The position numbers and the translations under genes are program-made. Positions 1 to 19,478 of a stretch of 64,000 bases of DNA are shown piece after piece. Position 1 is the first letter of the stretch, and every line of letters starts with the position of its first letter. Under the pieces are notes generated by a model that was not told where the DNA came from, did no database searches, and worked only from the letters and a program-made list of their open reading frames with translations. Where the stretch lies: the IMG/VR virus record IMGVR_UViG_3300044680_000280, positions 124,001 through 188,000 of that record. One strand, given 5' to 3'.

Positions 1-3000
1 TCGGAGGAATCCGTTACCCAGGTCGTCGAGGAGCGTGACGCCCGCGACTGCCGTCTGGTTTGCCGTGACGGGGTCGAGAGTTCGCTCGATGCTGGTAAAG
101 CCCAGAATCTTGCGGTGCGTATAGGGAGTCGCCACGTCGATTGCTGGGGAGCAGGACGCTCCTGCAACCGCCGCCGCAAAGAAGGTTCCGTCCACGATGC
201 TGTCGTAGGACTGGCCGGTCTCGTCGGTCAGGGTGATATCCGAGCTGTCGGGGTAGAGAGCCAGGATACGGTTCGAATTGAGGCTCTTGGCAACGGACTG
301 AGCATTGCTTGGAGTGGTTCCCGAAGCGAATCCGATCATACCCATGCGCTCTGCTTGATTTCGAATGCTCGACTGAACTTCGCAGTGCTGCGTGAGGTAC
401 GCAAACACTGAGGTGTCCGTCGCGAGCGGAACGATGACGTCGGGCTTGACATTGCCAGGAAGCGGGGTCGCGAGACCTTGAATCGCAGCGATGAAACTCG
501 CATCCGACGCCTGGTTCGTGTTCGCGACGGTGAGAACCTGGTCGATACCAACGAGAACCGCACCGTTCTGGACCATCAGATAGAAGGCAAGGGAGACGCG
601 GTTCTGCGGGCTGACCGCACCGAAGTTGGCCTCGACTGTCTTCTGCTGCTGGTAAAGACGAGTCGTGTAGTCCTGCTTCATGTACGTGTAGGACACGTAG
701 TAGGAGTCACCAATCGAAGGCGCGACGCCCGAGGGGTCGAACGTTTGAACCGTACCTGTATCGTTCACTCCGACACCGACCGTGTTCGAAACCGTTGTCT
801 CGAGACCGGGAATGGCGTACGTCGGAATCGACGAGGACACCTGGAAGGTTTCGCTTACGGTCAGGGTGAAGCTTCCAGCCGAGTCGTACGAGCCGCTCGA
901 GGCTGGGAGAACTGTGAAGCGAAGTCCCGTGACTTCGTCAACATAGGTCTGACCAGGGTAACCGACGTTGTTCGTACCCGTACCCGTACCGCTCGCATTC
1001 GAGGAGGTGACGACGTAGTTGTTCGTGGCGTCTTCGCCGTTATCCCCATCCGTACCAGGCGTGAGCCCGATGTTCGTAGTGGGATTGAAGGCCGAATTAC
1101 CCGAGGTGACGAAGGCGATGCTAGAGGATGCCGCACCGACGGTCAAAGACTCGAACGTGATGTAGTTCAAGCCATTGAGCTGATCGACATAAGCGACCGC
1201 GCCGCTTACGAAGCCCGACGTGGCCATCAGCTCATCGACAACTTCGTAGGCGAAAACCTTCGTCTGCGTTGCCGTCTGATTGACGGTGAGTCCGAGAGTC
1301 GCGTTCGACGTGCCCGAACCGATGGAGATGATCGAGTTGGCGTTATTCGTGGGGCTCGTCAAACGGAGCTTGTTGACGTTTCCAAGAGTTCCCGCCGACG
1401 CAACACCCGAAAGGCCCGGAACCGTATTGATGAGCGTCACAAGGGTCGACGTGGTAACGGAAGTACCAGCCGTCAGGGTGATGGTGTACTGAACCCCATT
1501 GACCGTAATGATGAGCTGGTCGTTGACACCCGCCGTGATGTTGAACGGTCCCGCAACCGATCCGAGAATCGTAGCGGGCTTGTTGATCGCACCAGGGGTG
1601 CCGTTCGCCGACTGGAAGGTCGTGAATCCAAGAACCGTCTCAACGGTTCCCTGCTCAATCGTGATGTTCGACACACTATCGAAACCGCCGGGGAGAGCCG
1701 CCGGAGTCGAGTAGCTGAAGATGTGAAAGAGCACGTCTCCGCCCGAGATCTGCGATAGGCCGGCGAGATGGTTCGGCGCCGTACCCGAGAAGGTGGCGTT
1801 CGCATCGATTGCCGCGTTGATCGCAGCCACGATAGCCGTAGGGGTCAGACTTCCGATAGGGATCGGGGCTACGACCGCCGTGCCGTCAATGAGCAGGTTG
1901 AGGTAGGGGGCCACTTGGGCTGTCGTCGCCGAATTCGTTGTACCCGTGTAAGATGCACTGAGCGTAACGACCGTACCAACAACCGTGGAAACGGTGTACG
2001 GAGTACCGGGCTGAGAAGCGAAGGTGACCTGAGAACCCGCTGTCAAGTAGCCCGTCTGATTGAGCGACGCGTTGACGACGGCCGAGGATGCCGTCACGGA
2101 GAATGTGCCGAGGAGGGCAGTTCCCGTGATGGTGATGTCACCGCCTGAAGGCGTAACGTGCTTACCGACGACAACGCCGCGAGCGGCCGACGCCAGGTTT
2201 GTCGTCACGTCCGTTCCATTGACCTCAGTTACCCAGGTTGCTGAGTAGGGGCTGAAGAAGCTGTAGGGCTCGGAGTTTCGATTCGTGAAAGAGGCGTTGT
2301 TCGCAGCGGCAGTCCCGAAGGTCACCGTGACAACCTCAGACACGGGCGTTCCAGCACCCGTGTGGAACGCATCCGGAATCGACTGCGAACCGCGAGGCCA
2401 CTGGACTGTCTCCGAAAGACCAGACTTCGTACCGAAGAGGATCTGGTAGAGGGGAGCGTTGTTGTTCGCATCGAGCATCGTGTACTGCCCGAATCCCAAA
2501 CCGCCCGGAACTTGGCACGTGAGGATGAAGGTATCGTCCTCGATGCGAGAGTACCAGAAGGTCGCAAACGCTTGGAAGTCCGGCGGAACCGGATTCTGAA
2601 GAGTGATGAGTCGGTTGGGGCCGTCGACCGCCGTAACAGTGACCTGTCCACGGTTCAGCGCATCGCGAAGAGACCGACCCACGTAGACCGTAACGAGGTC
2701 GGGTCGGTTCGTGACAACGTCTTGTCGTGAATTGGTAACCGACGCGAACAGGGTTTGTCCGAGTGGCGTATTGCGTCCGTTACCAGTGGTCGGCACCTCG
2801 GGAAGGAGGAACTGGTTCGGCGATACTGTTGCAGGAATGACCTGCGTGTTCGTCACTCGCGAGCACGGAGCGAGGAAGAGCTGGTCGTCGATGAGAAGCC
2901 CAGAGACTAGAGTCTCGTCGAACGGTTGAGCGCCCGGCGTCGTGGAACCCGCCGCAACGACGAAGCTTGTACCCCAGAAGATGACCGACACCGACGATGA

Positions 3001-4143
3001 CGGATTCGAAAGCACGAAATCCGTTCCCGGAAGGTAGTCGTTTCGACCCATCGCGATACCGCACTGAAGGATCGAGGTGACGAGAGCGTTCGGAAGGTAG
3101 TCGAACGTATCCTGCCAGGTATTCGAGAAGTACGTGACCGTGACGGTCGTCCCCGCGGCGGGCGCGAAGGAGAGAGTCACAATACCGTTCGTACCGTCGA
3201 GAGCCGTCGGAATGGTCTGCGTTCCGTTGACCTTGACGACGACCTTGCTTGTATCCGTCGTGGTAACGCCGCCGCCGCTGCCATCGACAACCGGGATCTG
3301 GTAAACCTGGAAGGCCTGGTTGCGAGTGGTCGCGGTCCCCGATGAGAATCCGAGAAGGCCGTTGGCCGTGCCAGAACCGATGACGAGATTCTGCGTCGTG
3401 GTGAGCTGAACGTGATTCAAACCGTCGTTGTCGGTGGAAACCGTAGCAACAAGGTTGGCGATAGCCGCCGCGTTGACCGCAGAGGCGAATCCCGCCGCCG
3501 TGTAAGTGTTGGCACCGAGAGTGATCGTTGAGCTCGTGCCGTTGACGGTGACCGTGAACTGGTCGCTCTGACCCGAAACAACCGTGTACGGTTCGGCTGC
3601 TGGCGAGACGAGAATCGCCTGAACTTGGGTGACCTGCGAAGAAACGTCATCCGTAAAGGATGTGTCGCCGCGGTGGAAGTAGTACGTAACTCGAACAATG
3701 TCCGTCGGTTGCGTCGGAACCTGAAGGGTAATGAGGCCCTTGGCGCCCTGAACCGAACCGACCGCGACCGGCGTACCGTTGACGGTAACAGTAACGGCAT
3801 TCGCCGAGTTCGTTACGATTCCTGTACCCTGTCCGTTGGTAATCGGAAAGTTTCGAACCTGGAAGGTCACGAGAGTTCCCGTCTGAACTCCAAGCACGGG
3901 GTTTTGGGGGTTGGTCGCGTTGACGACCCACTCTTCCGTGACGTCCTCGTTCACGATCTGCTGATCGACCGTTGCCGACGAACCTCGAACGAGCTCAACG
4001 TTATCGATCTCCAGGTCCTCCTGGCCGACACCGACAACTACCGGGATCCTTAGACCGGCAGTGAGGTTCGCAGTGTTCGCTTGCGTTAGCGTGCGGGTGT
4101 ATACGCCCGGGGGAACATAACTGAGGAACGGTCCCAAACTCAT
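1..4143 (-). CDS. Contractile tail sheath protein, 3'-partial (>1381 aa; runs off the left edge)
   Basis: ATG at 4143 reads MSLGPFLSYVPPGVYTRT (typical sheath YxxPGVY start). The frame was open wherever I translated it and ends at position 1 with NQTAVAGVTLLDDLGNGFLR, like a sheath C-terminal domain. Missing from the ORF track because its stop lies outside the window. Confidence 0.9.
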   Translation of the reverse strand, partial: MSLGPFLSYVPPGVYTRTLTQANTANLTAGLRIPVVVGVGQEDLEIDNVELVRGSSATVDQQIVNEDVTEEWVVNATNPQNPVLGVQTGTLVTFQVRNFPITNGQGTGIVTNSANAVTVTVNGTPVAVGSVQGAKGLITLQVPTQPTDIVRVTYYFHRGDTSFTDDVSSQVTQVQAILVSPAAEPYTVVSGQSDQFTVTVNGTSSTITLGANTYTAAGFASAVNAAAIANLVATVSTDNDGLNHVQLTTTQNLVIGSGTANGLLGFSSGTATTRNQAFQVYQIPVVDGSGGGVTTTDTSKVVVKVNGTQTIPTALDGTNGIVTLSFAPAAGTTVTVTYFSNTWQDTFDYLPNALVTSILQCGIAMGRNDYLPGTDFVLSNPSSSVSVIFWGTSFVVAAGSTTPGAQPFDETLVSGLLIDDQLFLAPCSRVTNTQVIPATVSPNQFLLPEVPTTGNGRNTPLGQTLFASVTNSRQDVVTNRPDLVTVYVGRSLRDALNRGQVTVTAVDGPNRLITLQNPVPPDFQAFATFWYSRIEDDTFILTCQVPGGLGFGQYTMLDANNNAPLYQILFGTKSGLSETVQWPRGSQSIPDAFHTGAGTPVSEVVTVTFGTAAANNASFTNRNSEPYSFFSPYSATWVTEVNGTDVTTNLASAARGVVVGKHVTPSGGDITITGTALLGTFSVTASSAVVNASLNQTGYLTAGSQVTFASQPGTPYTVSTVVGTVVTLSASYTGTTNSATTAQVAPYLNLLIDGTAVVAPIPIGSLTPTAIVAAINAAIDANATFSGTAPNHLAGLSQISGGDVLFHIFSYSTPAALPGGFDSVSNITIEQGTVETVLGFTTFQSANGTPGAINKPATILGSVAGPFNITAGVNDQLIITVNGVQYTITLTAGTSVTTSTLVTLINTVPGLSGVASAGTLGNVNKLRLTSPTNNANSIISIGSGTSNATLGLTVNQTATQTKVFAYEVVDELMATSGFVSGAVAYVDQLNGLNYITFESLTVGAASSSIAFVTSGNSAFNPTTNIGLTPGTDGDNGEDATNNYVVTSSNASGTGTGTNNVGYPGQTYVDEVTGLRFTVLPASSGSYDSAGSFTLTVSETFQVSSSIPTYAIPGLETTVSNTVGVGVNDTGTVQTFDPSGVAPSIGDSYYVSYTYMKQDYTTRLYQQQKTVEANFGAVSPQNRVSLAFYLMVQNGAVLVGIDQVLTVANTNQASDASFIAAIQGLATPLPGNVKPDVIVPLATDTSVFAYLTQHCEVQSSIRNQAERMGMIGFASGTTPSNAQSVAKSLNSNRILALYPDSSDITLTDETGQSYDSIVDGTFFAAAVAGASCSPAIDVATPYTHRKILGFTSIERTLDPVTANQTAVAGVTLLDDLGNGFLR

Positions 4144-4268
4144 TTTCGAGGCTCCCAGAGGAACGAAGGGTTAGGTCTGAATGCGTGTCTGATCTAAATC
4201 TGTCGCGAAACGCGAGAAGTGTCGTCTGGTTTGGATTTAGTATCTACGCAGTGAGACCTAACAAAGGA

Positions 4269-4712
4269 CTAACGATTCTTTCGATTTTCAGCCCTTTGTG
4301 CCCGCATCGAGTCAAATACAGCGTTCGAAAGTTCCTTACGGGCTTGCCTACCTGTCTGGGTCATAGGCTCATAATCGATAAAATCTCGACTCGTACGACG
4401 GATGAGCGCATGGGTGCCGCCCAACGCTCGAGCTTCCTGCTTGACCCTCTCCCGTTCGTGATATTGGGCCCATCGAGCCTCAGCGTCCCGACCGACCACC
4501 TTGTCAGCCGTTGGGTAATCGTCGACATGAACCCCCGTGTTGGCGGTTGAGCCAGTCGTGGAACCCTTGAACCCAAAAGACATGTTGCCGTCCCACACCC
4601 TAAACGCATCCTCCCCGCACTGGGGACACGCATGAGTCAGGTTCTCTGCCATCTTGAGGGTTCTTTCGAACTCCAATGAGCAATCGTTGCACTCAAAAAC
4701 GTATCTAGGCAC
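4269..4712 (-). CDS. FmdB-type zinc-ribbon protein
   Basis: MPRYVFECNDC...CPQCG: MPxYxF-CxxC...CxxC pattern. Confidence 0.7.
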   Translation of the reverse strand: MPRYVFECNDCSLEFERTLKMAENLTHACPQCGEDAFRVWDGNMSFGFKGSTTGSTANTGVHVDDYPTADKVVGRDAEARWAQYHERERVKQEARALGGTHALIRRTSRDFIDYEPMTQTGRQARKELSNAVFDSMRAQRAENRKNR

Positions 4713-4719
4713 GGGTCAC

Positions 4720-5922
4720 CTACTTGATCCTTTCGAAGTCACTATTCCGGCCAGCAAACAGGGGGAGGGTCGCGAAGACCAGATTGTTCGCTGTAGCGAT
4801 GAGCCCGGCCGAACTCGTTGGATCGCTGGGATCTGGAACCGTGCCCACAATAGCCGGACCGGGAATGGTCGGTTGAAGCTTGCTGATGGTAAAGGGTAGA
4901 GGAACGTGGAGTTCCCAGTCCGTCTGAATCTGAACGGTAAGGGAAGACGTGTACATGATGATCTCCCCGGTCTCATCCATGGGCTCTTCGCTCTCACCAC
5001 CCAAACTGATGTCAGTGATCTCAATACCCTCGTTCGAGAGAAAAGGACGCTTGTCCGCCCAAAGGTACATCATGACCCAATCCGAGATTTCCTCTCGCTG
5101 AATAGGGTCCTGGGATATGACATCGAGCTCGAAAGTCATATCCCACTTACCCCCGAACGCCTCAGCAGTGGCGACGCGGTCCTGCGTGACCACAATAGCC
5201 ACGGTATCGCCCTTTTTTGCCCTCTTTCCAAATGCCAGCACCACCCCCGGTAAGGTCTTGAAGTCCGCCGTGTTCCACTGGAATGCAACAGGACCTATGG
5301 ACTCAGCGGCATATCGATAATTGGCCGTAATCCTAGCACCCGGATTAAACGGGGTGAGAAACCGTATCTCCGAGGTTTGGTAATTGACCGAATAATCCGT
5401 TCCCTCTTTAAGCATGTAGCGACCATTCTCGTACATACGAACGGTACCGGCCACGGGTGTTCGCTGGAACGCAGCGTGTGTCTCCACTCCAGATTGAAAA
5501 TAGATGATCGGCTCCTGAGTGGCATCTAGGAGGGGATCCAAAATATACTCGCCATATTCGCTCGCATTCTGGGGGACCTTCAGAATCTCCATAAAGTACA
5601 CACCCGGGATGGTTGGCATGACGTCATTGTTTGACTGAAGTACTGCCATATCCTCGCGTACCCACTCGAGCGGATATGCGGGCGTACCAAAGAAGGCGAG
5701 CATAACGTGACTGACGACCTCCCCAAGGGAATTGTCAGCGGACAGAGAAACCTTGTTGGCGTTGACCCCCTTCAGAACAATACCGTATTGCGGACGCTCT
5801 GCGAACGAGTATCGATCCTGAATAAACGGGACGACCTTATCGTACACGGGATGCTTCGAGAAGGAGTCCTTTAACTCCTCCAGTAGCCGCCGCTTCATCG
5901 CCCCGCTGAGTCGATAGAACAT
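4720..5922 (-). CDS. Virion structural protein, probable tail terminator/completion protein
   Basis: 400 aa, just upstream of the sheath. C-terminal FELDVISQDPIQREEISDWV resembles tail-completion proteins; also carries a GTDYSVNY beta-module. Positional inference. Confidence 0.45.
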   Translation of the reverse strand: MFYRLSGAMKRRLLEELKDSFSKHPVYDKVVPFIQDRYSFAERPQYGIVLKGVNANKVSLSADNSLGEVVSHVMLAFFGTPAYPLEWVREDMAVLQSNNDVMPTIPGVYFMEILKVPQNASEYGEYILDPLLDATQEPIIYFQSGVETHAAFQRTPVAGTVRMYENGRYMLKEGTDYSVNYQTSEIRFLTPFNPGARITANYRYAAESIGPVAFQWNTADFKTLPGVVLAFGKRAKKGDTVAIVVTQDRVATAEAFGGKWDMTFELDVISQDPIQREEISDWVMMYLWADKRPFLSNEGIEITDISLGGESEEPMDETGEIIMYTSSLTVQIQTDWELHVPLPFTISKLQPTIPGPAIVGTVPDPSDPTSSAGLIATANNLVFATLPLFAGRNSDFERIK

Positions 5923-5923
5923 A

Positions 5924-6931
5924 CTATCCCGCGTGCTCTTCCAAAGCTAGAACGAGGAGACCTTCGGCTACCGCCGTCATGGGGTCTCTAGCCATACGGA
6001 TCTCACTGATGTTGACGGGAAATCCCTTCTTCTTGATTTCCCCGTACTCTTCCTTGAAGACCTGTTCGAAGTTACCAGCCAGCGTCGTACCGCCAGAAAT
6101 GACGAATGGGATGGGGTCGGGCAAATCGACGCTCGACTGCACCCGATTAAACTGAACCGCGATATTCTCGAGACAGTACCGAATGAGGGAACGGGCATAG
6201 AGGGCGATGGCTTCCTCATCCCGGTTGCTTTTGCTGGGATTGGCAATATCGACGCCACGTTCCTTGAGAGCGCACATCCGAGATGCCGTACTACCCATGG
6301 CTTTCGCAGCGTTCCGGTCGATCCAGTCTCCCCCGCGAGAGAGTGAGAACTCGAGACCCTTCACCGTCTGGTAAGCCAGAGCAACGTTGCACATTCCACT
6401 CCCAAAGGAGACGGCCAGCCCCGAGAAAGTCTGGTCAGCGCACTGCGAATAAATGAGGGCCATCGCCTCATTCATCGGGTGTGCCGTGTATCCCTGCTCA
6501 GAGAGGATCTTGCGGAAAATCTCCGTGTGGTAAACGATGTCCTGATCGGCATCGATGGGCGCCGCCGGCACTGAGTAAAAACAGTGTTCTCCAGCGACTC
6601 GGGGCGTTTCGACAACATCCTTGATGAGGAGACTCAAAACCTGCTGGGCCTTGAGCTCTCCTGCCGAAATGACTCCCTGACTGAGGGGACGTCGAACCTC
6701 CCGCTTGAACAGATTTGCCATGGCGAGAGCCGAATCTCCGATAACGATGAGCTGACCATCGATGTCCACGAAGTCTACCTTCGATAGACGGAGCTGCTTT
6801 TTGACCTCGGGCTCCAAGTCCAAGAAGGCGTCTCGGATTCGCTTGGTTGTGATCTTGTCTCCGACCTGCCTGGCCGAAACGACATTCATCGTGCCCAGGT
6901 CCAACCCAATTCCCACGCTCTCTTTGCTCAT
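5924..6931 (-). CDS. Actin-fold (MreB/FtsA/ParM-like) ATPase
   Basis: All five actin-superfamily motifs in order: IGLDLGT (phosphate 1), NEAMA (connect 1), SFGSGM (phosphate 2 variant), SGGTT (adenosine), PMTAVAEG (connect 2). Confidence 0.85.
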   Translation of the reverse strand: MSKESVGIGLDLGTMNVVSARQVGDKITTKRIRDAFLDLEPEVKKQLRLSKVDFVDIDGQLIVIGDSALAMANLFKREVRRPLSQGVISAGELKAQQVLSLLIKDVVETPRVAGEHCFYSVPAAPIDADQDIVYHTEIFRKILSEQGYTAHPMNEAMALIYSQCADQTFSGLAVSFGSGMCNVALAYQTVKGLEFSLSRGGDWIDRNAAKAMGSTASRMCALKERGVDIANPSKSNRDEEAIALYARSLIRYCLENIAVQFNRVQSSVDLPDPIPFVISGGTTLAGNFEQVFKEEYGEIKKKGFPVNISEIRMARDPMTAVAEGLLVLALEEHAG

Positions 6932-6979
6932 CTGATTTTCTCCATTGTTTTCATCTGATAGCGCTCTAAGCGCAAGTTT

Positions 6980-7762
6980 TCAAATCTTCCAGGGATCCCT
7001 TGCGTACTTAGCTCCGCCCTGAGACGGTTCCATTGAACGACTGCTTCGTTGCTTGAGTAAGTATACGAACTCCTCATGCTTGTCGGCGAAGCTTTGAAGG
7101 AGATTCTCGATACCATCGGTCATGGTGCCTTTGGCTTTCATCAGCTTGGACACGATCTGAAGTAGAACGAGAAAGCGAAGAGCTCCTTTGAGGGAGATCA
7201 GAACGTTTTCATCCGGGCTCGCCACAAGCGGGGCACCGTTGTAAAGTTCCTTAAGAATCAGCAGCACATGCGTAGACTGGATGACCGCGTTGACAAGTAC
7301 TGGCGTTCCTACACCGACTGAACGCTCGGCCAACTGGTCAATCATCTTGAGAGTGTCGTTGTACAGACGTTCGAAAAGCTGGTGATCCGCGTAGAAGGAG
7401 GGGCCAGACGCCTGCCAGTGATGGGTCTGATGGGCCAGGTTGATCGCCCGCATGAACGACAAGAGAGCCGCGAGCTCAGCCATTGACTCCTGACCATAGT
7501 CGAGAAGGAAATGGGCGAGAACGTTGGCGACTTCTTCGTTAGCGGCCTCCTTGCTGACCATCGCACGCACTTCGGCCAGCGAATCACTATCAGGCACGCC
7601 CGAAGCTTGCTTGGGGTGTCCAGCAGCTTTCCACGTATCGGCCCCAGGAAGATAGGGAGGACCCATCTTCAGGTGGTCGTACGTTGAGGGGTCGTGCCAG
7701 ACGGCATAAATTGCCGGAGCGTGACCGTTCTCGTACGGATTCTCGGGACCTTGATCAGCCAT
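6980..7762 (-). CDS. Dps/ferritin-like four-helix-bundle protein with N-terminal extension
   Basis: HQTHHWQASGPSFYADHQLFERLY...IDQLAER matches the Dps HW-x-G-x-F-xx-H...D-xx-AER pattern. Likely start is the ATG at 7762 (MADQGPEN), not the track start at 7882. Confidence 0.75.
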   Translation of the reverse strand: MADQGPENPYENGHAPAIYAVWHDPSTYDHLKMGPPYLPGADTWKAAGHPKQASGVPDSDSLAEVRAMVSKEAANEEVANVLAHFLLDYGQESMAELAALLSFMRAINLAHQTHHWQASGPSFYADHQLFERLYNDTLKMIDQLAERSVGVGTPVLVNAVIQSTHVLLILKELYNGAPLVASPDENVLISLKGALRFLVLLQIVSKLMKAKGTMTDGIENLLQSFADKHEEFVYLLKQRSSRSMEPSQGGAKYARDPWKI

Positions 7763-8123
7763 CGGTCGTCGGTTCTGATTCGGGAACCTCGAAGGAGGTC
7801 GCCTTCCACTCGTCGTCGGCCATCTTCTTCCGTTTGGTCTGCACTTTTGGACCTGGACCTGCTCCCATGGCTGCTTCCTCACGGAGATCCTGCCCTACAC
7901 TCGAGGGAGTCTCCCGTTCGGGCTTAGCAGAAAATGACTTGCCTGAGTAGGGCGACCTGACGGTCATCCTTTTTTCCTCAAGCCAGAACCGATGTCCTTC
8001 GGCGTCCGTGTATTTCCAAAGCATGGGAGATGCAGCCTGCTGCTTCTTCCCACTGTTTTTGGCAGCAAGCTTCTCGATGAGCTCACCGGCTTGTTTGCTG
8101 AGCTGATTTTGAACAGGGTGCAT
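7755..8123 (-). CDS. Hypothetical protein (122 aa)
   Basis: ATG start; overlaps the next gene by 8 nt; contains K/R-x-A motifs. Confidence 0.65.
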   Translation of the reverse strand: MHPVQNQLSKQAGELIEKLAAKNSGKKQQAASPMLWKYTDAEGHRFWLEEKRMTVRSPYSGKSFSAKPERETPSSVGQDLREEAAMGAGPGPKVQTKRKKMADDEWKATSFEVPESEPTTDG

Positions 8124-8156
8124 CGTTTGCCTCTAACTTGCACCGCAATAGAAACT

Positions 8157-8708
8157 CTACACACGCCCCTTCTGACGAAGTTCCCTCAACTTACCCGCGG
8201 CCCCCGAAACCGCACCATCGTCCGACTCCCCCCGCTTGGCCTCGATTCTCATTTCCGAATTCTCTGGAGTGATGCTCGACGGTATGAATGTGGGGACCTC
8301 CGATGCCACAACCTGAGGTCGTGAAACGGGAGCCAACGTTACGGCTGGGCTGGCTGGAATGGACGCCCCCACAGATTGTAAAAGCGTCAAGATTGAATCG
8401 AGCTTCTTTGCTTGGTCGACGAGAGCCTCCTTGAGTGCCTTGTTTTCCTCCTCCAAGGAAGGGACCTTAGGCACCACTTTTGGCTCGGGCGCTGGAATAG
8501 GCGGGGGAACACCCGGACCACCGTGAGAACCCGGATTCAACCGAAAGAGATGTTTCTGACCAATCGCCCGCCACAAGTCCTTCGACTCGTAGGCCCTATC
8601 CCCAGGAATTGCTACGGATACCCCATGAGGGACATCTATTCCCAGGTCATGTAGAATACACGTCGGGGTCCTAAGCCCAAATACGACGACGTTTATTTCT
8701 ACCGGCAT
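8157..8708 (-). CDS. Hypothetical protein (183 aa, Pro-rich with short coiled coil)
   Basis: Tightly packed ORF on the operon strand. Confidence 0.65.
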   Translation of the reverse strand: MPVEINVVVFGLRTPTCILHDLGIDVPHGVSVAIPGDRAYESKDLWRAIGQKHLFRLNPGSHGGPGVPPPIPAPEPKVVPKVPSLEEENKALKEALVDQAKKLDSILTLLQSVGASIPASPAVTLAPVSRPQVVASEVPTFIPSSITPENSEMRIEAKRGESDDGAVSGAAGKLRELRQKGRV

Positions 8709-8710
8709 GG

Positions 8711-9223
8711 TTACTTCCCAGTCAATACACCTTTGAGCTGCTTCATGACCTCGGCGGCCAATCGAGCCTTAACAAATTCTCGGGTTTCCTTCTTCGCCTT
8801 GTCAATAAGCGTGGTAGGACGGTACCCGGGATGCCACCAACTATTATGCAGCATCGACGCCCCAGTCGCCCATCGAAAAATGGTGGTACCGTCCTCAAGT
8901 TTGATGGGTATCGGACGTTTGGCCTTGGTAAGCCATGTCATCTGATGCGCCTTGCTCCCGTAAAGGAGTGGGAAGAACCCGGCGAAGTTTGTTGTAAGGA
9001 CTAAACTGCTTTTCTTGACGTGAATCTGTAGAGATTTGGCAATCTTAGCCTTGACTTTCGCGGAGTAGGCTGGATGAGTGATGAGACCCTCTAGCTTCTT
9101 CTTTAACCTGAGGTTGAGTTGGTACTTGAGGCTCCGAAGAACCTTGGCCGGATCTGCATGGAGGTTTCCCTCCCCGAGGATGGGTTTACCGTAAATACCA
9201 GTGACTCGACGACGAGGGGACAT
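8711..9223 (-). CDS. Hypothetical basic protein, possible neck/tail-completion component
   Basis: 170 aa, Lys/Arg-rich, abuts the neck-like gene; positional inference only. Confidence 0.5.
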   Translation of the reverse strand: MSPRRRVTGIYGKPILGEGNLHADPAKVLRSLKYQLNLRLKKKLEGLITHPAYSAKVKAKIAKSLQIHVKKSSLVLTTNFAGFFPLLYGSKAHQMTWLTKAKRPIPIKLEDGTTIFRWATGASMLHNSWWHPGYRPTTLIDKAKKETREFVKARLAAEVMKQLKGVLTGK

Positions 9224-10576
9224 TTAGTACTCGATATTCGCCCAAACGGGCTGGCGACCGCGGAGCTGACGATCCTCTGGGATCTCTGGCTTGTCCGTGA
9301 TCTGATTGTCTGCTTCATACTCCGGCCCGTTGGGCATGAACTCAACGGCTGGAAACCGCAGATTATCGAGCGGGACACGGTACCGAATGTCCTTCTCATC
9401 AAAATGACCGACGTTGAAGTGCTGCTGCAAGAGCATGCCCCGATTGGTCGGCATCCGAACGCCGCCTATCGTGTACCGCTCCCCATTGATCTTCACAATG
9501 AAATCCCGTTGAGATAGGAGCGGGCTAGGTCCTGTCCAAGTCTCATAGGTGTGCGTCACCGTGCGGCCTAGGTCCTTTTGGGAGATGGTCTTTTCCGAGT
9601 CGTCGGGGGCGATGATGATATCGTACGGACCATCGTAACCCCCAATGAAACCGGTACCATAGCAAAGTGGGTCGTCATTAATCGGCTGCTTATGCACATC
9701 GTCAGGAATGCACGGGCATGGGACACCCACCTGTTTGCGGAGAAACACCTTGACGCGCTCCCCGCCCTGCTCGAGAATCCAACGGTTACGCCGAACGGCT
9801 TCCCGCCACATGTAGTCCATTTTCTCGAGCTCGTACGAGTTCGTCATCGTAGCCGCCTCGAGCGGGGTCTCCATGAGGTCGTTGCACTGAACCGTCGTCA
9901 GACTGTTGTTCACCGGAATGCCGACTGTCGTAAAACGCCAGAAAACCCGCTGAACAAGGTCCGTTCGCAAAAGGGCTTTCGTGTATCGATAGGTACACGT
10001 AACCTTGCTCGTTGCCGTGGGAACAACCGTAGGTAGGTAATTCTGCTTGGAGGGATCCGGATACCGTCGAATGTCGATCTCAACCTCACCCGTTTGCCCG
10101 ATGACCGAGAGAACTGGAACCTCGGTTCCGTCAACAAAGACTTGAACGTCTAGCGGGGAGTTCGCGTAGGTCATCTGAGAACCCGGCTTGACGATGGGAT
10201 GGCGAAGCGTCCTGAAAACGTACCTGGGGTGATAAAGTCCCGCGCCCTCGTCCCCAAAAGTCACCCAACTGTTCGACACGTCCTCATCGGGAACGAGTAC
10301 GTTGTCCGTCACATCCCTCCAGTAACCGGAACCTACGGGGTAATCCGTGATCCGTTCGAAAGGTCCAAACTCCGAATCGAACGAGCGGTAGATGTTGACC
10401 CCCAAGATTTGGAAACGGCTATTAACCGCCAAGTTTGAGGGATTGTCCCAAGTGAGATCAAAGGCGCCCGGTCGGTGAACGCTCCTCATGAAAGCGTTCA
10501 GAGGGGATGCGGGCCAGGGGGCTCGAGAGAGCTCTAGCTCAGTGATATTTCTGTCACGATTAGTGGCGTACGGCAT
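9224..10576 (-). CDS. Putative neck/head-closure protein
   Basis: About 450 aa. C-terminal half has CPC...PLCYGTGFIGGY followed by a stopper-like region (QRDFIVKINGERYTI). Confidence 0.55.
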   Translation of the reverse strand: MPYATNRDRNITELELSRAPWPASPLNAFMRSVHRPGAFDLTWDNPSNLAVNSRFQILGVNIYRSFDSEFGPFERITDYPVGSGYWRDVTDNVLVPDEDVSNSWVTFGDEGAGLYHPRYVFRTLRHPIVKPGSQMTYANSPLDVQVFVDGTEVPVLSVIGQTGEVEIDIRRYPDPSKQNYLPTVVPTATSKVTCTYRYTKALLRTDLVQRVFWRFTTVGIPVNNSLTTVQCNDLMETPLEAATMTNSYELEKMDYMWREAVRRNRWILEQGGERVKVFLRKQVGVPCPCIPDDVHKQPINDDPLCYGTGFIGGYDGPYDIIIAPDDSEKTISQKDLGRTVTHTYETWTGPSPLLSQRDFIVKINGERYTIGGVRMPTNRGMLLQQHFNVGHFDEKDIRYRVPLDNLRFPAVEFMPNGPEYEADNQITDKPEIPEDRQLRGRQPVWANIEY

Positions 10577-10614
10577 CAACGGCCCTCAAAGTAGCCGTCG
10601 AATAAGAAGAGGTG

Positions 10615-10911
10615 TCACTCCTCGGACGGAATGTCTGGCATGACCAATTCGATGACGCCCGTCGTTCCGTCAATAGTCACCTGGGTCTCTGAGGAAATCC
10701 CTCGAGCCTCGAGTTCCCGTGCGAAAAGTCGACCTTTTTCCTCATCAAGGGTTCGTGCGGCCACGATGAGGGGAATCTTCTCGAGCTCCATGTTGAGGAG
10801 GGTCTCGGCGACCTGCTGGCGACTGCCCATGATGCGGGACAGATTTCGAAGGACCTCGGGGGAGACGGGATCCTTAATGCTGAGCTTTGGTAGCTTGGGT
10901 TCAGCGGGCAT
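10615..10911 (-). CDS. Hypothetical protein (98 aa)
   Basis: ATG start, operon context. Confidence 0.6.
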   Translation of the reverse strand: MPAEPKLPKLSIKDPVSPEVLRNLSRIMGSRQQVAETLLNMELEKIPLIVAARTLDEEKGRLFARELEARGISSETQVTIDGTTGVIELVMPDIPSEE

Positions 10912-10920
10912 ACCAGTCCA

Positions 10921-11205
10921 CTACACCGTGGATGCTGAGACCTTCTCCAAAATCATAGCGAGCAACGGACCGATCTTCTCGAACTCGGTCCTCATGTCCT
11001 CCGAGACTTGTTTGAGGAGAGCAACATCCTCATTGGTCGAGGTCACAATCCGTTCGATAGAATCCAACCGACGAATGACACCGGCGAGGTCGTTGTCTAC
11101 CTCATCCACATGCCTGGTTACAAGCTCGAGTTTCGGAGCCACCGCGGCAACAACGGCGATCATAGTCTCTGAGTCTAGATTCTCGAATGTTGCTCTTGTA
11201 CCCAT
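10921..11205 (-). CDS. Hypothetical coiled-coil protein (94 aa)
   Basis: ATG overlaps the upstream TAA (TAATG coupling); heptad pattern. Confidence 0.6.
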   Translation of the reverse strand: MGTRATFENLDSETMIAVVAAVAPKLELVTRHVDEVDNDLAGVIRRLDSIERIVTSTNEDVALLKQVSEDMRTEFEKIGPLLAMILEKVSASTV

Positions 11206-12089
11206 TAGAACCCCACAAACTTTCGTGGACTCAATACACCACGTCCTGCATAGGGTCCGAAAGCGCTTCGAATACCCGTACCAAACTTAGGTTGCTGGAC
11301 ACCCTTGAGGATGTTGACGGTAGCTTTCGCCTTCTCAAGTTGCTGCGTGAAGTTCTCTTGAGCCGCCTGCTGGGCCGCCTCGTACTTCGAAGACTTGTCG
11401 AGGTTTAGGCTCACCCCGCCGATGGTATAGTCGAATTCATCGGCAACCCAATTGATACGAAGCGCCTGAAGGGCGAAGACCATCGCACCCGTCAGAAGCA
11501 AAGTGCGCCACTCAGGTTTCATCGCAACCATGGCGTCAACACTGGCAAACGGTGTCCTAGGGGGAGATGCGATGATCTCATCAAGGGACCGCTCAAGGTA
11601 TTCCTTAAGTTCGTTATTTTCCCAAATGAAGCCGAAGACTCGGCTAAACTGAGATATGGTCTCTTCGTGGGTCGGCGGACGAAAATGGTAATTGCGGTCA
11701 GGAGAGTTTGACACAAGCATACCAGACTTCTGAAGGATGAAATTGTGCCAACCTTCTGCCGTGAGATCATACATGTAGCGACGAGAAGAAAGTCTCTCTG
11801 TAGATAGAACCCGAACTGATGAAGAAGCACCGGCAACGACCGTTTGGGGACTCAGTGACTCCACCTCAGTCTTGAGTTTCGGGGTAAGAAACACACGATG
11901 ACCACCAGTCAGGACAGACGAGCCTTTCGTTGTATGTACCCTAAAAATAGGCTCTGACTCGACCTCTGCGCGCTGTACTTGGAGAACTCGCTTCCACTCC
12001 TGCACCCCGTTCGGGGACACGGATCGAACTCGCAAGGTCCCCGTGTAGAATGCGGACTTGATTCTCTCACTTTGCTGGGGAGTTAACAT
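11205..12089 (-). CDS. Split-intein C-precursor: IntC (aa 1-128) plus 166-aa C-extein of a probable head-tail adaptor/neck protein
   Basis: Block B VLTGGHRVF, block F MYDLTAEGWHNF, block G GMLVSN|S(+1). No block A. Has its own SD (AAAGGA, 5 nt before ATG). Confidence 0.88.
   Translation of the reverse strand: MLTPQQSERIKSAFYTGTLRVRSVSPNGVQEWKRVLQVQRAEVESEPIFRVHTTKGSSVLTGGHRVFLTPKLKTEVESLSPQTVVAGASSSVRVLSTERLSSRRYMYDLTAEGWHNFILQKSGMLVSNSPDRNYHFRPPTHEETISQFSRVFGFIWENNELKEYLERSLDEIIASPPRTPFASVDAMVAMKPEWRTLLLTGAMVFALQALRINWVADEFDYTIGGVSLNLDKSSKYEAAQQAAQENFTQQLEKAKATVNILKGVQQPKFGTGIRSAFGPYAGRGVLSPRKFVGF
11706..12089 (-). mobile_element. IntC fragment of an atypically split intein (128 aa)
   Basis: HINT blocks B, F and G; terminal Asn followed by Ser+1; penultimate Ser instead of His; no Cys in the fragment. 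Confidence 0.85.
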
Positions 12090-12345
12090 CGAAGTCCTTT
12101 TCCGTCCAGATCAAAAAGTCCCACCCCATACTGGCCGCATAGGAAGAAGCTGCCTCAAGTCGACGCTGCACGTTATGGTCCGTTGGGAGAGACAGCACCC
12201 AACTTGCTTTAACTTCAATGAGAGCAACGGTTCCATCCTGATGTGTCACAACAAAGTCTGGAAGCATCCAGCGACCGTCCGGAAGTTCTATTCGCGGTTC
12301 GAATACGTACTCTCTAACGGAGGGGTCCTGGTCTAATAAGGACAC
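12067..12345 (-). CDS. TnsA-N-like PD-(D/E)XK endonuclease (92 aa, possibly N-truncated)
   Basis: LLDQDPSVREYVFEP...LPDFVV...LIEVK...GWDFLIWTE matches the TnsA N-terminal / T4 gp4-like nuclease pattern. GTG start, no clear SD. Confidence 0.75.
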   Translation of the reverse strand: MSLLDQDPSVREYVFEPRIELPDGRWMLPDFVVTHQDGTVALIEVKASWVLSLPTDHNVQRRLEAASSYAASMGWDFLIWTEKDFDVNSPAK

Positions 12346-12362
12346 AACGACAAGGGATCAGT

Positions 12363-12860
12363 TCAGGATGTGCCGTGAATGGCTTCGTATAGGTCACGGA
12401 TAGATACTACCATATTCTCCCCACTCACGTCAACTTCTATCGTCTCCTCTTCACCTACACAATTGTCCCTAAGTAGAATACGGAGTCTCCGACCCATGTC
12501 CTGCTCCGCGGACGTTAGGGTCGGTTCAATCGAATCCGGGTTGACCTTGTCAATAACCGAAAAGTTCATGAGCACTTGCTGAATGGGCGCCCCCGGCATT
12601 TCACGAAACGTCCAGCGAATGCGATATTCTCCTAGATTTGCGTCCAAAGGAACGATAATGCTCGCAAAGTACTCCCCTAGCGATGGGTTGACGGGCTGAC
12701 GACGCGGAGCCCCAACGAGAACTTCGCGTCCCGTCGTAAAGTCGTAGAGAGCGTAGCTAATCTCGGCAGCGTTCTCGGGGGTTCCGTTGACGTTGTCGAG
12801 AAAAATGCTCAAGTCGTTACGACCGAGCTGCTGTCCCTTGTAAAAAGCGCTACCGCTCAT
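12363..12860 (-). CDS. Split-intein N-precursor: 133-aa N-extein (Ig-like structural domain) plus IntN (32 aa)
   Basis: Ends ...RILLRDN|CVGEEETIEVDVSGENMVVSIRDLYEAIHGTS*, an intein block A (Cys1...I-x-DL) followed by a stop. Confidence 0.82.
   Translation of the reverse strand: MSGSAFYKGQQLGRNDLSIFLDNVNGTPENAAEISYALYDFTTGREVLVGAPRRQPVNPSLGEYFASIIVPLDANLGEYRIRWTFREMPGAPIQQVLMNFSVIDKVNPDSIEPTLTSAEQDMGRRLRILLRDNCVGEEETIEVDVSGENMVVSIRDLYEAIHGTS
12366..12461 (-). mobile_element. IntN fragment of an atypically split intein (32 aa)
   Basis: Cys1 codon at 12461-12459; block A-like sequence; acidic composition complementary to the basic start of IntC. Confidence 0.8.
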
Positions 12861-13186
12861 TTGACCTCTTCGAGATCCTCCTGTGGCACAACGTGTCGAC
12901 CGTTCTTCTCGAGCTGTACATAGAACTTTCCAAACGGAATGTATTTCTCGATGGTACCCACGTCTCCGTGCCAGTGAGTTAAACCGTGAGAGGGCAGAAC
13001 CCTTACCCTCGTGCCTGGCTTCAGGCTAGACGGCACGCTCGCAACGCGAGCGACAACCTTCTTGACAATGAGGGCGTCCTGAAAATCTCGAAGTTCTCGA
13101 CTCATGGCCGTCTTTCCTTGGGACTTCCTCTTACTGGGAAGCCAATCCTCGTTTTCTGCGTCTAGGTGTATCTCAAGCTTGGCCAT
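12857..13186 (-). CDS. Small protein with C-terminal SH3/KOW-like domain (109 aa)
   Basis: Likely ATG at 13186 coupled to the ART stop (TAATG); LKPGTRVRV...GDVGTIEKY...FYVQL is an SH3-like barrel pattern. Confidence 0.6.
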   Translation of the reverse strand: MAKLEIHLDAENEDWLPSKRKSQGKTAMSRELRDFQDALIVKKVVARVASVPSSLKPGTRVRVLPSHGLTHWHGDVGTIEKYIPFGKFYVQLEKNGRHVVPQEDLEEVK

Positions 13187-15803: not shown

Positions 15804-15806
15804 AGA

Positions 15807-16190
15807 TTAGGCCTCAGTGATTTGCAACTGCCCCGCTGGGAAGGAAACTTGCGTAGATGCTAGAACGGTCCTCGGGGCTCCAAGGGCGCCGTAGTAGAGC
15901 AGGTTACCGCCCGACACGTTGTCCACGATACCCCATGCGACAATCGTACCCCAGGTAGCTGAAGCGGTAGGGAACAAGATGTCCGCAACGTTGGATACAA
16001 CTCCTTCACTCGCAGACGTCCAGGTAACTGCTTGACGCGCGTACGATCCACCAGAAACCTCAACACCGGCAGAAGTCGGAGTCGGAGAAGTCGTATAGAT
16101 AGCAACGTATACGGCGGGGGGCGACTCATACGAAACGTCGTTCAGCACCGCGTTGAGCATAACGTTGTCGAGGTACTGGCTCTTGGGCAT
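15807..16190 (-). CDS. Small tail-fibre-associated protein, paralog of 16878-17270
   Basis: YLDNVMLNAVL...VYVAIYTT...EVSGGSYARQAVTW pattern seen in phage minor tail proteins. Confidence 0.65.
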   Translation of the reverse strand: MPKSQYLDNVMLNAVLNDVSYESPPAVYVAIYTTSPTPTSAGVEVSGGSYARQAVTWTSASEGVVSNVADILFPTASATWGTIVAWGIVDNVSGGNLLYYGALGAPRTVLASTQVSFPAGQLQITEA

Positions 16191-16235
16191 AACGTGGACT
16201 CCTACCTCAGTCGAAAAGACAAGAGCTTTAGAGGG

Positions 16236-16640
16236 CTATTGGCAGCCCGGCTTGTTGAAAGACGAGGAGAGCCCACCAGGGGGTCCTGAGGACGGGAGTT
16301 CCGTGACATCGTAGTCCTGAGCCGCAATTTGCGTCCCTGACGGATAGATGATCAGAAGCCGCCAGTACCCCACCGCATTCGGCATGAACCGTACGTTGTA
16401 ATACCCTGGAGCCCCTGGAATCTCGTTCCAATAAACTTTACCGGAGGCGATTTGGGAGTCTGTAACCCCAGAACCGCTGGTCAAAACCCAAGGTTGAGGA
16501 ACGTTGTTAAAAAAGAGGGCATCCTGAATTTGCAGGATCGTAAGCCCAGTAACGCGAGTGTACCCGTCGGGCTGAAAGAAGTCCGCCTGGTCGCGAACAA
16601 GCTCATTATTGTATACTACGCGCCCGCGTGTGGTAGCCAT
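16236..16640 (-). CDS. Hypothetical Ig-like structural protein (134 aa)
   Basis: Beta-rich; GYYNVRFMPNAVGYWRL. Confidence 0.6.
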   Translation of the reverse strand: MATTRGRVVYNNELVRDQADFFQPDGYTRVTGLTILQIQDALFFNNVPQPWVLTSGSGVTDSQIASGKVYWNEIPGAPGYYNVRFMPNAVGYWRLLIIYPSGTQIAAQDYDVTELPSSGPPGGLSSSFNKPGCQ

Positions 16641-16643
16641 CCG

Positions 16644-16814: not shown

Positions 16815-16877
16815 CTTGTTGTCCTTCCTCCCAGAATTCGTTTGTCTCACACCCTCACTGGAAGACATTATCGGAAT

Positions 16878-17270: not shown

Positions 17271-17333
17271 GAGGGGATCGCTCCTTCTGAGTCGTCTGAA
17301 TCTTGTGGGTGATAAAAGGAAACGTGATTGGAA

Positions 17334-17582: not shown

Positions 17583-17607
17583 GACCGTTCGTCCTCATCT
17601 CTATCTG

Positions 17608-19471: not shown

Positions 19472-19478
19472 GTGTTCA

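What the first reader, a model, noticed from the sequence alone, without database searches (positions are those of the whole stretch)
5924..6931. Actin-like ATPase among tail-assembly genes, with an altered phosphate-2 motif
Seen: full actin-fold motif set, but phosphate 2 reads SFGSG instead of the usual D-x-G-G/x-G. The gene lies 1 nt from the putative tail terminator gene. Established: known jumbo-phage cytoskeletons are mostly tubulin (PhuZ); actin-like phage proteins are less studied. Inference: a late filament or assembly chaperone for positioning capsids or tails.
Basis: partly seen in the sequence, partly recalled or inferred. Interest (0 to 1): 0.6.

Follow-up and report, generated by a model that had tools for sequence, protein, structure and literature searches.

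The report
Volactin-type actin gene in huge phage
A 400-kb-plus peat-soil phage, like hundreds of uncultured relatives, carries a well-conserved gene for a volactin-family actin homologue right in front of its tail-terminator gene, which suggests an untested actin-type phage cytoskeleton made late in infection.

Summary
Window 5924-6931, on the minus strand, encodes a 335-aa actin-fold ATPase. Its stop codon lies 1 nt before a gene whose predicted fold is a tail terminator.

The protein is neither an odd MreB nor an odd FtsA. It is a full-length member of Pfam Volactin (PF25216; 244 bits, cut-off 35).

The "altered" phosphate-2 motif (SFGSG) is not peculiar to this gene. Ser-x-Gly-x-Gly-[M/L]-x-Asn is invariant in all 220 family members I aligned, phage and cellular. 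That includes the haloarchaeal clade whose founding member forms dynamic filaments in vivo.

The phage genes form one well-supported clade, 51-82% identical to each other and 30-45% identical to cellular members. At least 280 IMG/VR contigs carry one, many of them 200-530 kb long.

In 77 of 78 viral loci the tail terminator follows directly downstream. In 69 of 73 a Dps/ferritin-like gene precedes. Volactin is more conserved than the terminator in 76 of 77 loci. The phage record holds no tubulin.

The most likely reading is an ATP-dependent filament made with the late neck and tail genes. Its cargo or role is unknown. I found no paper describing volactins in phages. I class it as a new member of a known family in a new setting, of moderate interest.

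The parts
5924..6931 (-). Volactin-family actin homologue gene (335 aa, P0001)
   Evidence: Pfam PF25216 at E 2.6e-72, 244.5 bits, profile positions 3-321 of 321. AF2 model pLDDT 92.3. Z 29.2 to MamK, 27.8 to BeeR, about 26 to MreB and crenactin.
6940..6943 (-). Shine-Dalgarno-like GGAG, 8 nt upstream of the ATG
   Evidence: Read directly from the sequence.
6884..6913 (-). Phosphate-1 motif (residues 7-16, G-x-D-x-G-T; D11)
   Evidence: Aligned to the MreB phosphate-1 motif by hhalign. D11 is kept in 216 of 217 family members.
6458..6478 (-). Connect-1 motif (residues 152-158, with E155)
   Evidence: E155 aligns with the Glu of MreB's E-E-P-M-A-A-A. It is kept in 220 of 220 sequences.
6386..6418 (-). 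Phosphate-2 motif (residues 172-182, S175-F-G-S-G-M-C-N); the family signature is S-x-G-x-G-[M/L]-x-N
   Evidence: S175 aligns with the Asp of MreB's DIGGGTTE. S175, G177, G179 and N182 are each kept in 220 of 220 sequences.
6080..6103 (-). Adenosine motif (residues 277-284, S-G-G-T)
5945..5992 (-). Connect-2 motif (residues 314-329)
   Evidence: Aligned to the MreB C-terminal motif. P317, G324 and L326 are conserved in at least 95% of both phage and cellular members.
4720..5922 (-). Tail terminator gene (400 aa, P0002): a gpU-like core with an inserted beta-sandwich (about residues 132-205). It starts 1 nt after the volactin stop.
   Evidence: VIA-align Z 14.8 and 13.3 to a phage 812 neck chain, 12.9 to the E217 neck, 11.6-11.8 to lambda gpU, 9.9 to the A-1(L) gp7 terminator. 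Atlas look-alike cluster carrying PF23932 SP10_terminator, score 0.91. A homologue lies directly downstream of volactin in 77 of 78 viral loci.
6980..7762 (-). Dps/ferritin-like gene (260 aa from the ATG), immediately upstream of volactin
   Evidence: Pfam Ferritin E 6.5e-5, just below cut-off. phrog_3636 'DNA binding protein' E 1.3e-12. Found upstream of volactin in 69 of 73 viral loci.
4269..4712 (-). Zinc-ribbon protein gene (147 aa), a conserved member of the module
   Evidence: PF09723 Zn_ribbon_8 at E 1.4e-10. The same position is conserved in relatives.
1..4143 (-). Giant protein gene (1491 aa in the full contig; it runs off the window), a conserved member of the module, function unknown
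   Evidence: Gene calls. It is 40-61% identical in relatives at the same position. The only family hit is a weak DUF2460-like stretch.

Best explanation
The ORF encodes a phage-borne member of the Volactin family of actin-fold ATPases. It has the complete four-subdomain actin fold and keeps the phosphate-1 Asp, the connect-1 Glu and the adenosine loop. Like every member of its family, it carries Ser in place of the phosphate-2 Asp of MreB, ParM and actin.

The most likely mechanism has four steps.
1. It binds ATP-Mg.
2. It assembles into dynamic filaments in the infected cell, as the founding cellular volactin does.
3. It is made late, from the same transcript as the neck and tail genes. In this phage it is probably translationally coupled to the tail terminator.
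4. The filament acts as an intracellular scaffold or track for building or placing the very large virions of this phage clade.

What is shown: family membership, fold, motif conservation, a single conserved phage clade, and conserved linkage to the terminator and Dps-like genes.

What is inferred: ATP binding, polymerisation, late expression, and above all the cargo or role.

My rough odds: family member 0.97; binds nucleotide 0.85; polymerises 0.6; co-expressed with late genes 0.7; role in virion assembly or positioning 0.25-0.3.
For: Family and fold:
- Pfam Volactin at 244.5 bits over the full length.
- The AF2 model has pLDDT 92.3.
- The top structural matches are all filament-forming actins: the MamK filament subunit at Z 29.2, BeeR 27.8, crenactin and MreB about 26, F-actin about 25.
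- 36 positions, including all the nucleotide-binding motifs, are at least 95% conserved across phage and cellular members.
- The family's founding member forms dynamic filaments in vivo (PMC10869688).

Constraint in phages:
- The phage clade is monophyletic, SH-aLRT 99.
- At least 280 IMG/VR contigs carry a relative, many of them 200-530 kb.
- The word search returned 1308 hits. The best 120 are 69-81% identical and several sit on 280-570 kb contigs.
- Volactin is more conserved than the adjacent terminator in 76 of 77 loci.

Linkage:
- The terminator lies directly downstream in 77 of 78 loci, with a median gap of about 21 nt. The Dps-like gene lies upstream in 69 of 73.
- In this window the gap is 1 nt, and no promoter-like or terminator-like sites occur above chance.
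- The surrounding genes all read on the minus strand: terminase, portal, protease, tail-fibre-like genes.
- No tubulin and no second MreB-like gene is found in the 406-kb record.
Against: - There is no expression data and no biochemistry. Only peat DNA runs hold the sequence; no RNA run was found.
- Gene order in huge phages is a weak guide to function. Topoisomerase IB and UvrD genes lie a few genes downstream, so the module borders DNA-metabolism genes as well.
- The phosphate-2 Asp that is replaced here is needed for ATP hydrolysis in MreB and ParM (my own knowledge, not tested here). Hydrolysis chemistry in this family is therefore unknown.
- No partner or adaptor is identified.
- Volactin in Haloferax acts in cell shape, not in particle assembly.
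Confidence: 0.45

Rival explanations
1. The filament positions or segregates phage DNA, or a replication or packaging site. This would resemble the prophage actin AlpC with its adaptor AlpA, plasmid ParM, or the tubulin PhuZ of nucleus-forming jumbo phages. On this reading, its place beside tail genes is incidental.
For: - Phage-encoded cytoskeletal proteins with known functions act on DNA or on replication compartments. AlpC is one example (PMC4446434, PMC5539076). PhuZ is another (reviewed in PMC7950403).
- The conserved upstream neighbour is Dps-like, matching a PHROG annotated as a DNA-binding protein.
- A zinc-ribbon protein is part of the module.
- No tubulin is present in the record to do this job.
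Against: - No centromere-like repeat array lies near the gene.
- The intergenic spaces are only 1 and 48 nt.
- No ParM/StbA-type family match appeared in the Pfam scan.
- The conserved linkage is to a tail terminator.
Confidence: 0.2
2. The phage uses volactin to reshape the host cell, changing its shape or size or blocking division, so that a cell can hold very large particles. This would mirror the cell-shape role of cellular volactin.
For: - The only studied family member affects the rod-to-disk transition in Haloferax volcanii (PMC10869688).
- Cellular members are widespread: haloarchaea, Archaeoglobaceae, Thermoplasmatales, Omnitrophota, Planctomycetota, Magnetococcales and Desulfosarcina. 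A cytoskeletal role is plausible in all of them.
Against: - The phage clade has 20 clade-specific invariant residues and is only 30-45% identical to cellular members. It is unlikely simply to plug into a host volactin system.
- Host-takeover genes are usually early genes, not embedded in the neck and tail block.
- The host is unknown.
Confidence: 0.2
3. It is a non-polymerising actin-fold ATPase that works as an assembly chaperone, an Hsp70-like nucleotide switch, for the tail terminator or for neck-tail joining.
For: - Tight and conserved coupling to the terminator gene.
- The Hsp70 nucleotide-binding domain is also a strong fold match, at Z 24.6-24.7.
- The altered phosphate-2 loop might slow hydrolysis.
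Against: - It has no substrate-binding domain; the protein is only the 335-aa actin core.
- The best structural matches are filament formers.
- The cellular family founder polymerises and carries the same phosphate-2 loop.
Confidence: 0.1
4. It is a recent, passive capture of a host gene, or cellular DNA mis-assigned to a virus, with no phage-specific function.
For: - IMG/VR labels the record a 'provirus'.
- Some relatives sit in contigs binned into bacterial MAGs.
Against: - Those MAG contigs carry the same phage gene order.
- The phage clade is monophyletic on a long stem.
- At least 280 viral contigs carry the gene.
- GC and GC3 equal those of the neighbouring genes.
- It is flanked on both sides by phage genes.
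- It is more conserved than the adjacent structural gene.
Confidence: 0.02

Closest known systems
Volactin (VolA, HVO_2015) of Haloferax volcanii and the Pfam family PF25216
   Same: - Same family by profile: 244.5 bits over the full length.
- Same length class and the same actin fold.
- Same phosphate-2 signature S-x-G-x-G-[M/L]-x-N, plus 36 near-invariant positions.
- The founder forms dynamic filaments (PMC10869688).
   Different: - It is encoded by a huge phage and is only 36-40% identical to haloarchaeal members.
- It belongs to a separate clade with 20 clade-specific invariant residues.
- It lies between a Dps-like gene and a tail terminator gene, a context not found in any cellular locus.
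- Its function in infection is unknown.
MamK, MreB, BeeR and crenactin (solved filament-forming prokaryotic actins)
   Same: - Closest solved folds: MamK Z 29.2, rmsd 2.9 over 296 residues; BeeR Z 27.8; crenactin and MreB about 26.
- Phosphate 1, connect 1 and the adenosine motif all align with MreB's.
   Different: - Only 16-22% identical.
- MreB_Mbl profile score is 14.8 bits, below the cut-off of 27.
- The phosphate-2 Asp, Thr and Glu of MreB are Ser, Met and Asn here.
- In the tree, MreB and MamK-like proteins from volactin-carrying genomes fall outside the family.
AlpC/AlpA of the Corynebacterium glutamicum prophage CGP3
   Same: A phage-encoded actin-like protein, which shows that phages do use actin homologues (PMC4446434, PMC5539076).
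   Different: AlpC works with a DNA-binding adaptor and alpS sites in a ParMRC-like way, for viral DNA transport and replication. Here no centromere-like repeats or recognisable adaptor are present. The family is Volactin, the phage is a huge one (over 400 kb), and the linkage is to a tail gene.
PhuZ tubulin of nucleus-forming jumbo phages (Chimalliviridae)
   Same: A cytoskeletal NTPase encoded by a phage with a very large genome. It is a possible functional analogue for intracellular organisation.
   Different: PhuZ has a different fold (tubulin/FtsZ). No tubulin-family gene is found in this record. Whether this phage builds a nucleus-like compartment was not tested.

Membership tests
Volactin (Pfam PF25216) | Full-length match to the family profile above the curated cut-off | tested here: met
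   244.5 bits against a cut-off of 35, E 2.6e-72, profile positions 3-321 of 321. The same result came from a six-frame search of the record.
Volactin (Pfam PF25216) | Complete four-subdomain actin (ASKHA) fold with the five nucleotide-binding and hinge motifs | tested here: met
   AF2 model pLDDT 92.3, pTM 0.90. Z 29.2 to MamK and about 26 to MreB. The motifs align with MreB's at 95.8% probability.
Volactin (Pfam PF25216) | Family-specific phosphate-2 loop S-x-G-x-G-[M/L]-x-N. I derived this signature here from 220 members; it is not a published definition. | tested here: met
   S175, G177, G179 and N182 are each present in 220 of 220 sequences. Position 180 is M in 207 and L in 13. Haloarchaeal, Omnitrophota, Magnetococcales and phage members all carry it.
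Volactin (Pfam PF25216) | Groups with volactins rather than with MreB or MamK in a tree | tested here: met
   The family is separated from MreB, MamK-like and archaeal MreB-like outgroups at SH-aLRT 98. The phage clade has support 99. This is a quick tree with long outgroup branches.
Volactin (Pfam PF25216) | Dynamic polymerisation in cells, the property that led to the founder being called a cytoskeletal protein | not testable with these tools
   This rests only on the literature for H. volcanii (PMC10869688). The homodimer prediction gave no verdict.
MreB/Mbl (Pfam PF06723) | Profile match above the curated cut-off | tested here: not met
   14.8 bits against a cut-off of 27, E 0.013, with no stretch passing on its own. 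The own-genome search found nothing at E up to 1.
MreB/Mbl (Pfam PF06723) | Phosphate-2 D-x-G-G-G-T-[TS]-[ED] | tested here: not met
   Ser, Met and Asn stand at the Asp, Thr and Glu positions.
ParM/AlpC-type actin segregation system | An actin-like ATPase beside a small DNA-binding adaptor gene and a centromere-like repeat array | tested here: not met
   No tandem repeats in window 1-20000 and only chance-level short repeats around the gene. The intergenic spaces are 1 and 48 nt. No ParM/StbA family match in the Pfam scan. Whether the Dps-like or zinc-ribbon proteins act as adaptors was not tested.
Tail terminator, gpU-like (for the neighbour P0002) | gpU-type alpha/beta core fold, as in solved phage neck structures | tested here: met
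   Z 14.8 and 13.3 to phage 812 neck chains of 275-277 residues. Z 12.9 to the E217 neck. Z 11.6-11.8 to lambda gpU with 125 of 131 residues aligned. Z 9.9 to the A-1(L) gp7 terminator. The model is only moderate (pLDDT 65.7), but its confident core is what aligns. I assigned the phage 812 chain to gp99 by its size and its core-plus-beta-sandwich build, using the description in PMC12886913, not from a chain table.

The most novel reading that the evidence does not exclude
A large, uncultured clade of huge soil and freshwater phages, which has no PhuZ-type tubulin, has recruited a volactin-type actin as a conserved late gene that is functionally tied to the tail terminator. That would be an actin-based phage cytoskeleton dedicated to neck and tail morphogenesis or particle placement, a role not known for any actin homologue.
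Probability: 0.25. Interest if true: 0.8.

Novelty: new member of a known kind. Interest (0 to 1): 0.55.

Why it matters
Known phage cytoskeletons are mostly tubulins (PhuZ, TubZ). The one studied phage actin, AlpC, is a ParM-like DNA mover in a small prophage.

Here an actin homologue of a different and barely studied family is a strongly conserved gene in hundreds of huge-phage contigs. It is locked next to a tail terminator gene and is more conserved than that structural gene.

If it polymerises in infected cells, it would give huge phages an actin-type cytoskeleton alongside the tubulin-type one. It would also be a tractable soluble protein for working out how the volactin family hydrolyses ATP without the usual phosphate-2 Asp.

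The work also shows that volactin-family genes are widespread in bacteria such as Omnitrophota, Magnetococcales and Planctomycetota, not only in haloarchaea.

Tried and rejected
- PHROGs gave no family for the protein. Sequence search of PDB chains gave nothing at E up to 1.
- A homodimer prediction (two copies, alignment A2) scored 0.00. The tool's verdict is 'no answer', so it counts neither for nor against self-assembly.
- A search for sequencing runs found only peat DNA metagenomes and no RNA run. I therefore did not use read laying and have no expression evidence.
- Promoter-like and terminator-like sites around the gene were no more frequent than in shuffled sequence.
- Repeat and tandem-repeat scans found no centromere-like array.
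- The Atlas feature search on the conserved 451-aa upstream ORF gave nothing usable, score 0.77. PHROGs and Pfam left most neighbouring genes unnamed.
- Cellular volactin loci share none of the phage neighbours. They also show no common partner among themselves.
- Literature searches found no paper on phage volactins: 'volactin' returned 17 papers, none about phages among the 14 listed, and I also searched 'actin-like' with 'jumbo phage', and 'huge phages' with 'actin'.
- The second GenBank phage homologue (LR756511.1, 28% identical) sits on a long branch near the archaeal clade in the quick tree. An AU test does not reject one clade for all phage sequences (p 0.53), so one acquisition versus two stays open.
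- I did not run the large representative-protein search, because the word search and the family scans had already settled the family.

Full report
WHAT IS THERE

The window is part of an IMG/VR virus record of 406,734 bp, labelled 'provirus' with an estimated completeness of 85%. The same gene sits on a 463,523-bp JGI contig. The only sequencing runs that hold the stretch are peat metagenomes.

The plus-strand reading of 5924-6931 is full of stops. The gene is on the minus strand: 335 aa, ATG at 6931-6929, GGAG 8 nt upstream, stop TAG at 5926-5924. Independent gene calls in two assemblies give the same 335-aa product.

WHICH FAMILY

- Pfam gives a full-length match to Volactin (PF25216): 244.5 bits against a cut-off of 35, E 2.6e-72. 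MreB_Mbl reaches only 14.8 bits against a cut-off of 27.
- PHROGs has no family for it. No PDB chain matches by sequence.
- An AlphaFold2 model built from a 35-sequence alignment is confident, with pLDDT 92.3 and pTM 0.90.
- The model is a complete actin fold. Its best matches are the MamK filament subunit (Z 29.2, rmsd 2.9, 296 residues, 22% identity), BeeR (27.8), crenactin and MreB (about 26), F-actin (about 25) and the Hsp70 nucleotide-binding domain (about 24.7).

THE PHOSPHATE-2 MOTIF

A profile-profile alignment against MreB proteins taken from volactin-carrying genomes has 95.8% probability and lines up all five motifs. The key equivalences are:
- D11 with the phosphate-1 Asp.
- E155 with the Glu of the connect-1 motif.
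- S175, M180 and N182 with the Asp, Thr and Glu of MreB's D-I-G-G-G-T-T-E.

It is not special to this gene. I aligned 221 sequences: about 125 phage-type and 94 cellular. S175, G177, G179 and N182 are each present in 220 of 220 informative rows. E155 is present in 220 of 220 and D11 in 216 of 217.

The haloarchaeal orthologues score about 447 bits against the Pfam model and carry the same loop. H. volcanii volactin was reported to form filaments that grow and shrink in vivo (PMC10869688). The Ser is therefore a family signature that is compatible with polymerisation. How the family hydrolyses ATP without that Asp is an open question for the whole family.

RELATIVES AND ORIGIN

- The word-based protein search returned 1308 hits. 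The best 120 all carry PF25216, are 69-81% identical, and several lie on contigs of 280-570 kb.
- IMG/VR holds at least 280 contigs with a relative. Among the best 80, many are 200-529 kb long.
- GenBank phages hold two relatives, both from metagenomes: LR745208.1 (485 kb, 49% identical) and LR756511.1 (595 kb, 28% identical).
- Cellular genomes hold family members at 35-45% identity. They occur in haloarchaea, Archaeoglobaceae, Thermoplasmatales, Omnitrophota, Planctomycetota, Magnetococcales, Desulfosarcina and a Neomarinimicrobiota MAG.
- Five contigs binned into MAGs are 51-65% identical: Methylobacter, Betaproteobacteria, Legionellales, Lysinibacter and one unnamed. All five carry the phage gene order, so they are phage DNA.

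In a quick maximum-likelihood tree rooted on MreB and MamK-like proteins:
- The family is separated from the outgroups at SH-aLRT 98.
- The phage sequences form one clade with support 99 on a stem of 0.74.
- That clade is not nested in any cellular clade. The order of the four main clades is unresolved.
- LR756511's protein is a long branch placed near the archaeal clade. An AU test does not reject a single clade of all phage sequences (p 0.53).

P0001 is 51-82% identical to its phage clade and 30-45% identical to cellular members. Twenty positions are fixed in the phage clade but rare in cells. GC and GC3 of the gene match its neighbours. A recent host capture is therefore excluded.

SURROUNDINGS

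The named genes of the window all read on the minus strand:
- Large terminase, 55390-57399.
- Portal, 51155-52987.
- Prohead protease, 44188-45681.
- A GH5 glycosidase-domain protein and a tail-fibre-like protein, 21833-26287.
- Two Gp80 fibre-protein paralogues.
- The module that holds the finding.

The gene that starts 1 nt after the volactin stop (4720-5922, 400 aa) has no significant family match; its only hit is a weak DUF2460 stretch below the Pfam cut-off. Its model is moderate, pLDDT 65.7. Even so, its confident core aligns with tail terminators:
- Z 14.8 and 13.3 to a 275-277-residue chain of the phage 812 neck.
- Z 12.9 to the E217 neck.
- Z 11.6-11.8 to lambda gpU.
- Z 9.9 to the cyanophage A-1(L) gp7 terminator.

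Foldseek agrees. The protein-language-model look-alikes include a cluster carrying PF23932 SP10_terminator, score 0.91. The phage 812 terminator is described as an alpha/beta core plus a beta-sandwich that grips the sheath (PMC12886913). P0002 shows the same build, with an inserted beta-sandwich at about residues 132-205.

CONSERVED LINKAGE

I examined the 80 best IMG/VR loci.
- 77 of the 78 with enough downstream sequence have the terminator homologue directly downstream on the same strand.
- The median gap is about 21 nt, and about two thirds of gaps are under 50 nt.
- 69 of 73 have the Dps/ferritin-like gene directly upstream.
- Volactin is more conserved than the terminator in 76 of 77 loci, with median identities of 65% and 53%.

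The wider module recurs down to about 50% identity. It runs: 451-aa ORF, small ORFs, Dps-like gene, volactin, terminator, zinc-ribbon protein, roughly 1500-aa giant protein. None of these neighbours occurs next to cellular volactins.

The record holds no tubulin-family gene and no second MreB-like gene. No centromere-like repeats lie nearby.

HOW IT MOST LIKELY WORKS

Shown:
- It is an intact and strongly constrained actin-fold protein of the Volactin family.
- It is fixed in a large clade of huge phages.
- It is kept next to, and in this phage almost touching, the tail terminator gene within a co-directional structural block.

Inferred:
- It binds ATP and polymerises as the cellular founder does.
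- It is made late together with the neck and tail proteins.
- It provides a filament used to organise assembly or placement of very large particles.

The rivals are positioning of phage DNA or compartments (AlpC-, ParM- or PhuZ-like), reshaping of the host cell, and a non-polymerising chaperone. None of them can be excluded. I put the specific assembly role at only about 0.25-0.3.

NOVELTY

The protein is a clear member of a known family, and phage-encoded actins are known (AlpC; PMC4446434). What seems not to have been described is three things together: a volactin-family actin as a conserved gene of huge phages, its fixed linkage to a tail terminator, and the family-wide Ser-type phosphate-2 loop.

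In the paper library, 'volactin' occurs in 17 papers. None of the 14 listed concerns phages. The huge-phage and jumbo-phage papers I checked do not mention a phage-encoded actin homologue. This is absence within the library searched, not proof of absence.

I class it as a new member of a known kind in a new setting, of moderate interest.

Noticed in passing
window 15807-16190 and 16878-17270, minus strand: Two paralogous genes match Pfam PF23140 'Podophage GP4 fiber I protein gp80' strongly (E 1.3e-39 and 3e-34). They lie within the tail region of what is otherwise a huge phage.
   Followed up: partly
window 24710-26287 and 21833-24685, minus strand: A 525-aa protein carries a glycosyl hydrolase family 5 (cellulase) domain, E 1.2e-38. 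It sits next to a 950-aa protein with a tail-fibre-like stretch (phrog_1980). This is probably a tail-borne polysaccharide depolymerase.
   Followed up: no
window 11205-12089, minus strand, and the small ORF beside it (L002 4665-4865): There is a sub-threshold intein-splicing-domain hit (E 3.4e-6) and a 66-aa Tn7 TnsA-like N-terminal fragment between conserved genes. Gene calls differ between two assemblies of the same phage (189 versus 294 aa). This may be the remnant of a homing element.
   Followed up: no
window 6980-7762, minus strand: A Dps/ferritin-like gene (phrog_3636 'DNA binding protein', E 1.3e-12) lies directly upstream of volactin in 69 of 73 related viral loci. It is a candidate partner and is untested.
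   Followed up: partly
L014-L028, for example L020 5144-8599: Omnitrophota and some Planctomycetota genomes carry two tandem volactin-family paralogues. The second has an N-terminal extension of about 150 aa. In L020 a coiled-coil protein with weak tropomyosin-like hits precedes them. This looks like an undescribed bacterial cytoskeletal locus.
   Followed up: partly
L032 and the same genome (G002: L091, L094, L098): Magnetococcales carry a volactin-family gene in addition to MreB and two MamK-like genes, so these bacteria have at least three distinct actin families.
   Followed up: partly
L009, L010, L011, L012, L037: Contigs binned into MAGs named Methylobacter, 'uncultured bacterium', Betaproteobacteria, Legionellales and Lysinibacter carry the phage module (451-aa ORF, volactin, terminator, zinc ribbon, giant protein). 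They are most likely huge-phage DNA mis-binned into these genomes.
   Followed up: yes
L008 10022-11041 (LR756511.1, a 595-kb phage): A second, very divergent phage volactin (28% identical, Pfam 227.7 bits) sits in a different gene context, with no terminator homologue beside it. Whether it was acquired independently is unresolved.
   Followed up: partly
L002 17956-21008, just beyond the window's left end: A type IB topoisomerase gene (PF01028) and a UvrD-like helicase of about 1100 aa follow the giant protein gene, so the structural block abuts DNA-metabolism genes.
   Followed up: no
whole record G000: IMG/VR labels the 406,734-bp record a 'provirus', while the JGI contig with the identical gene is 463,523 bp. 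Nothing in the window looks cellular. The label may be a trimming artefact, and the extra roughly 57 kb might reveal the host.
   Followed up: no
window 13186-14415, minus strand: A 409-aa protein has a weak, sub-threshold match to dinitrogenase reductase ADP-ribosyltransferase (DRAT), E 3.3e-4.
   Followed up: no
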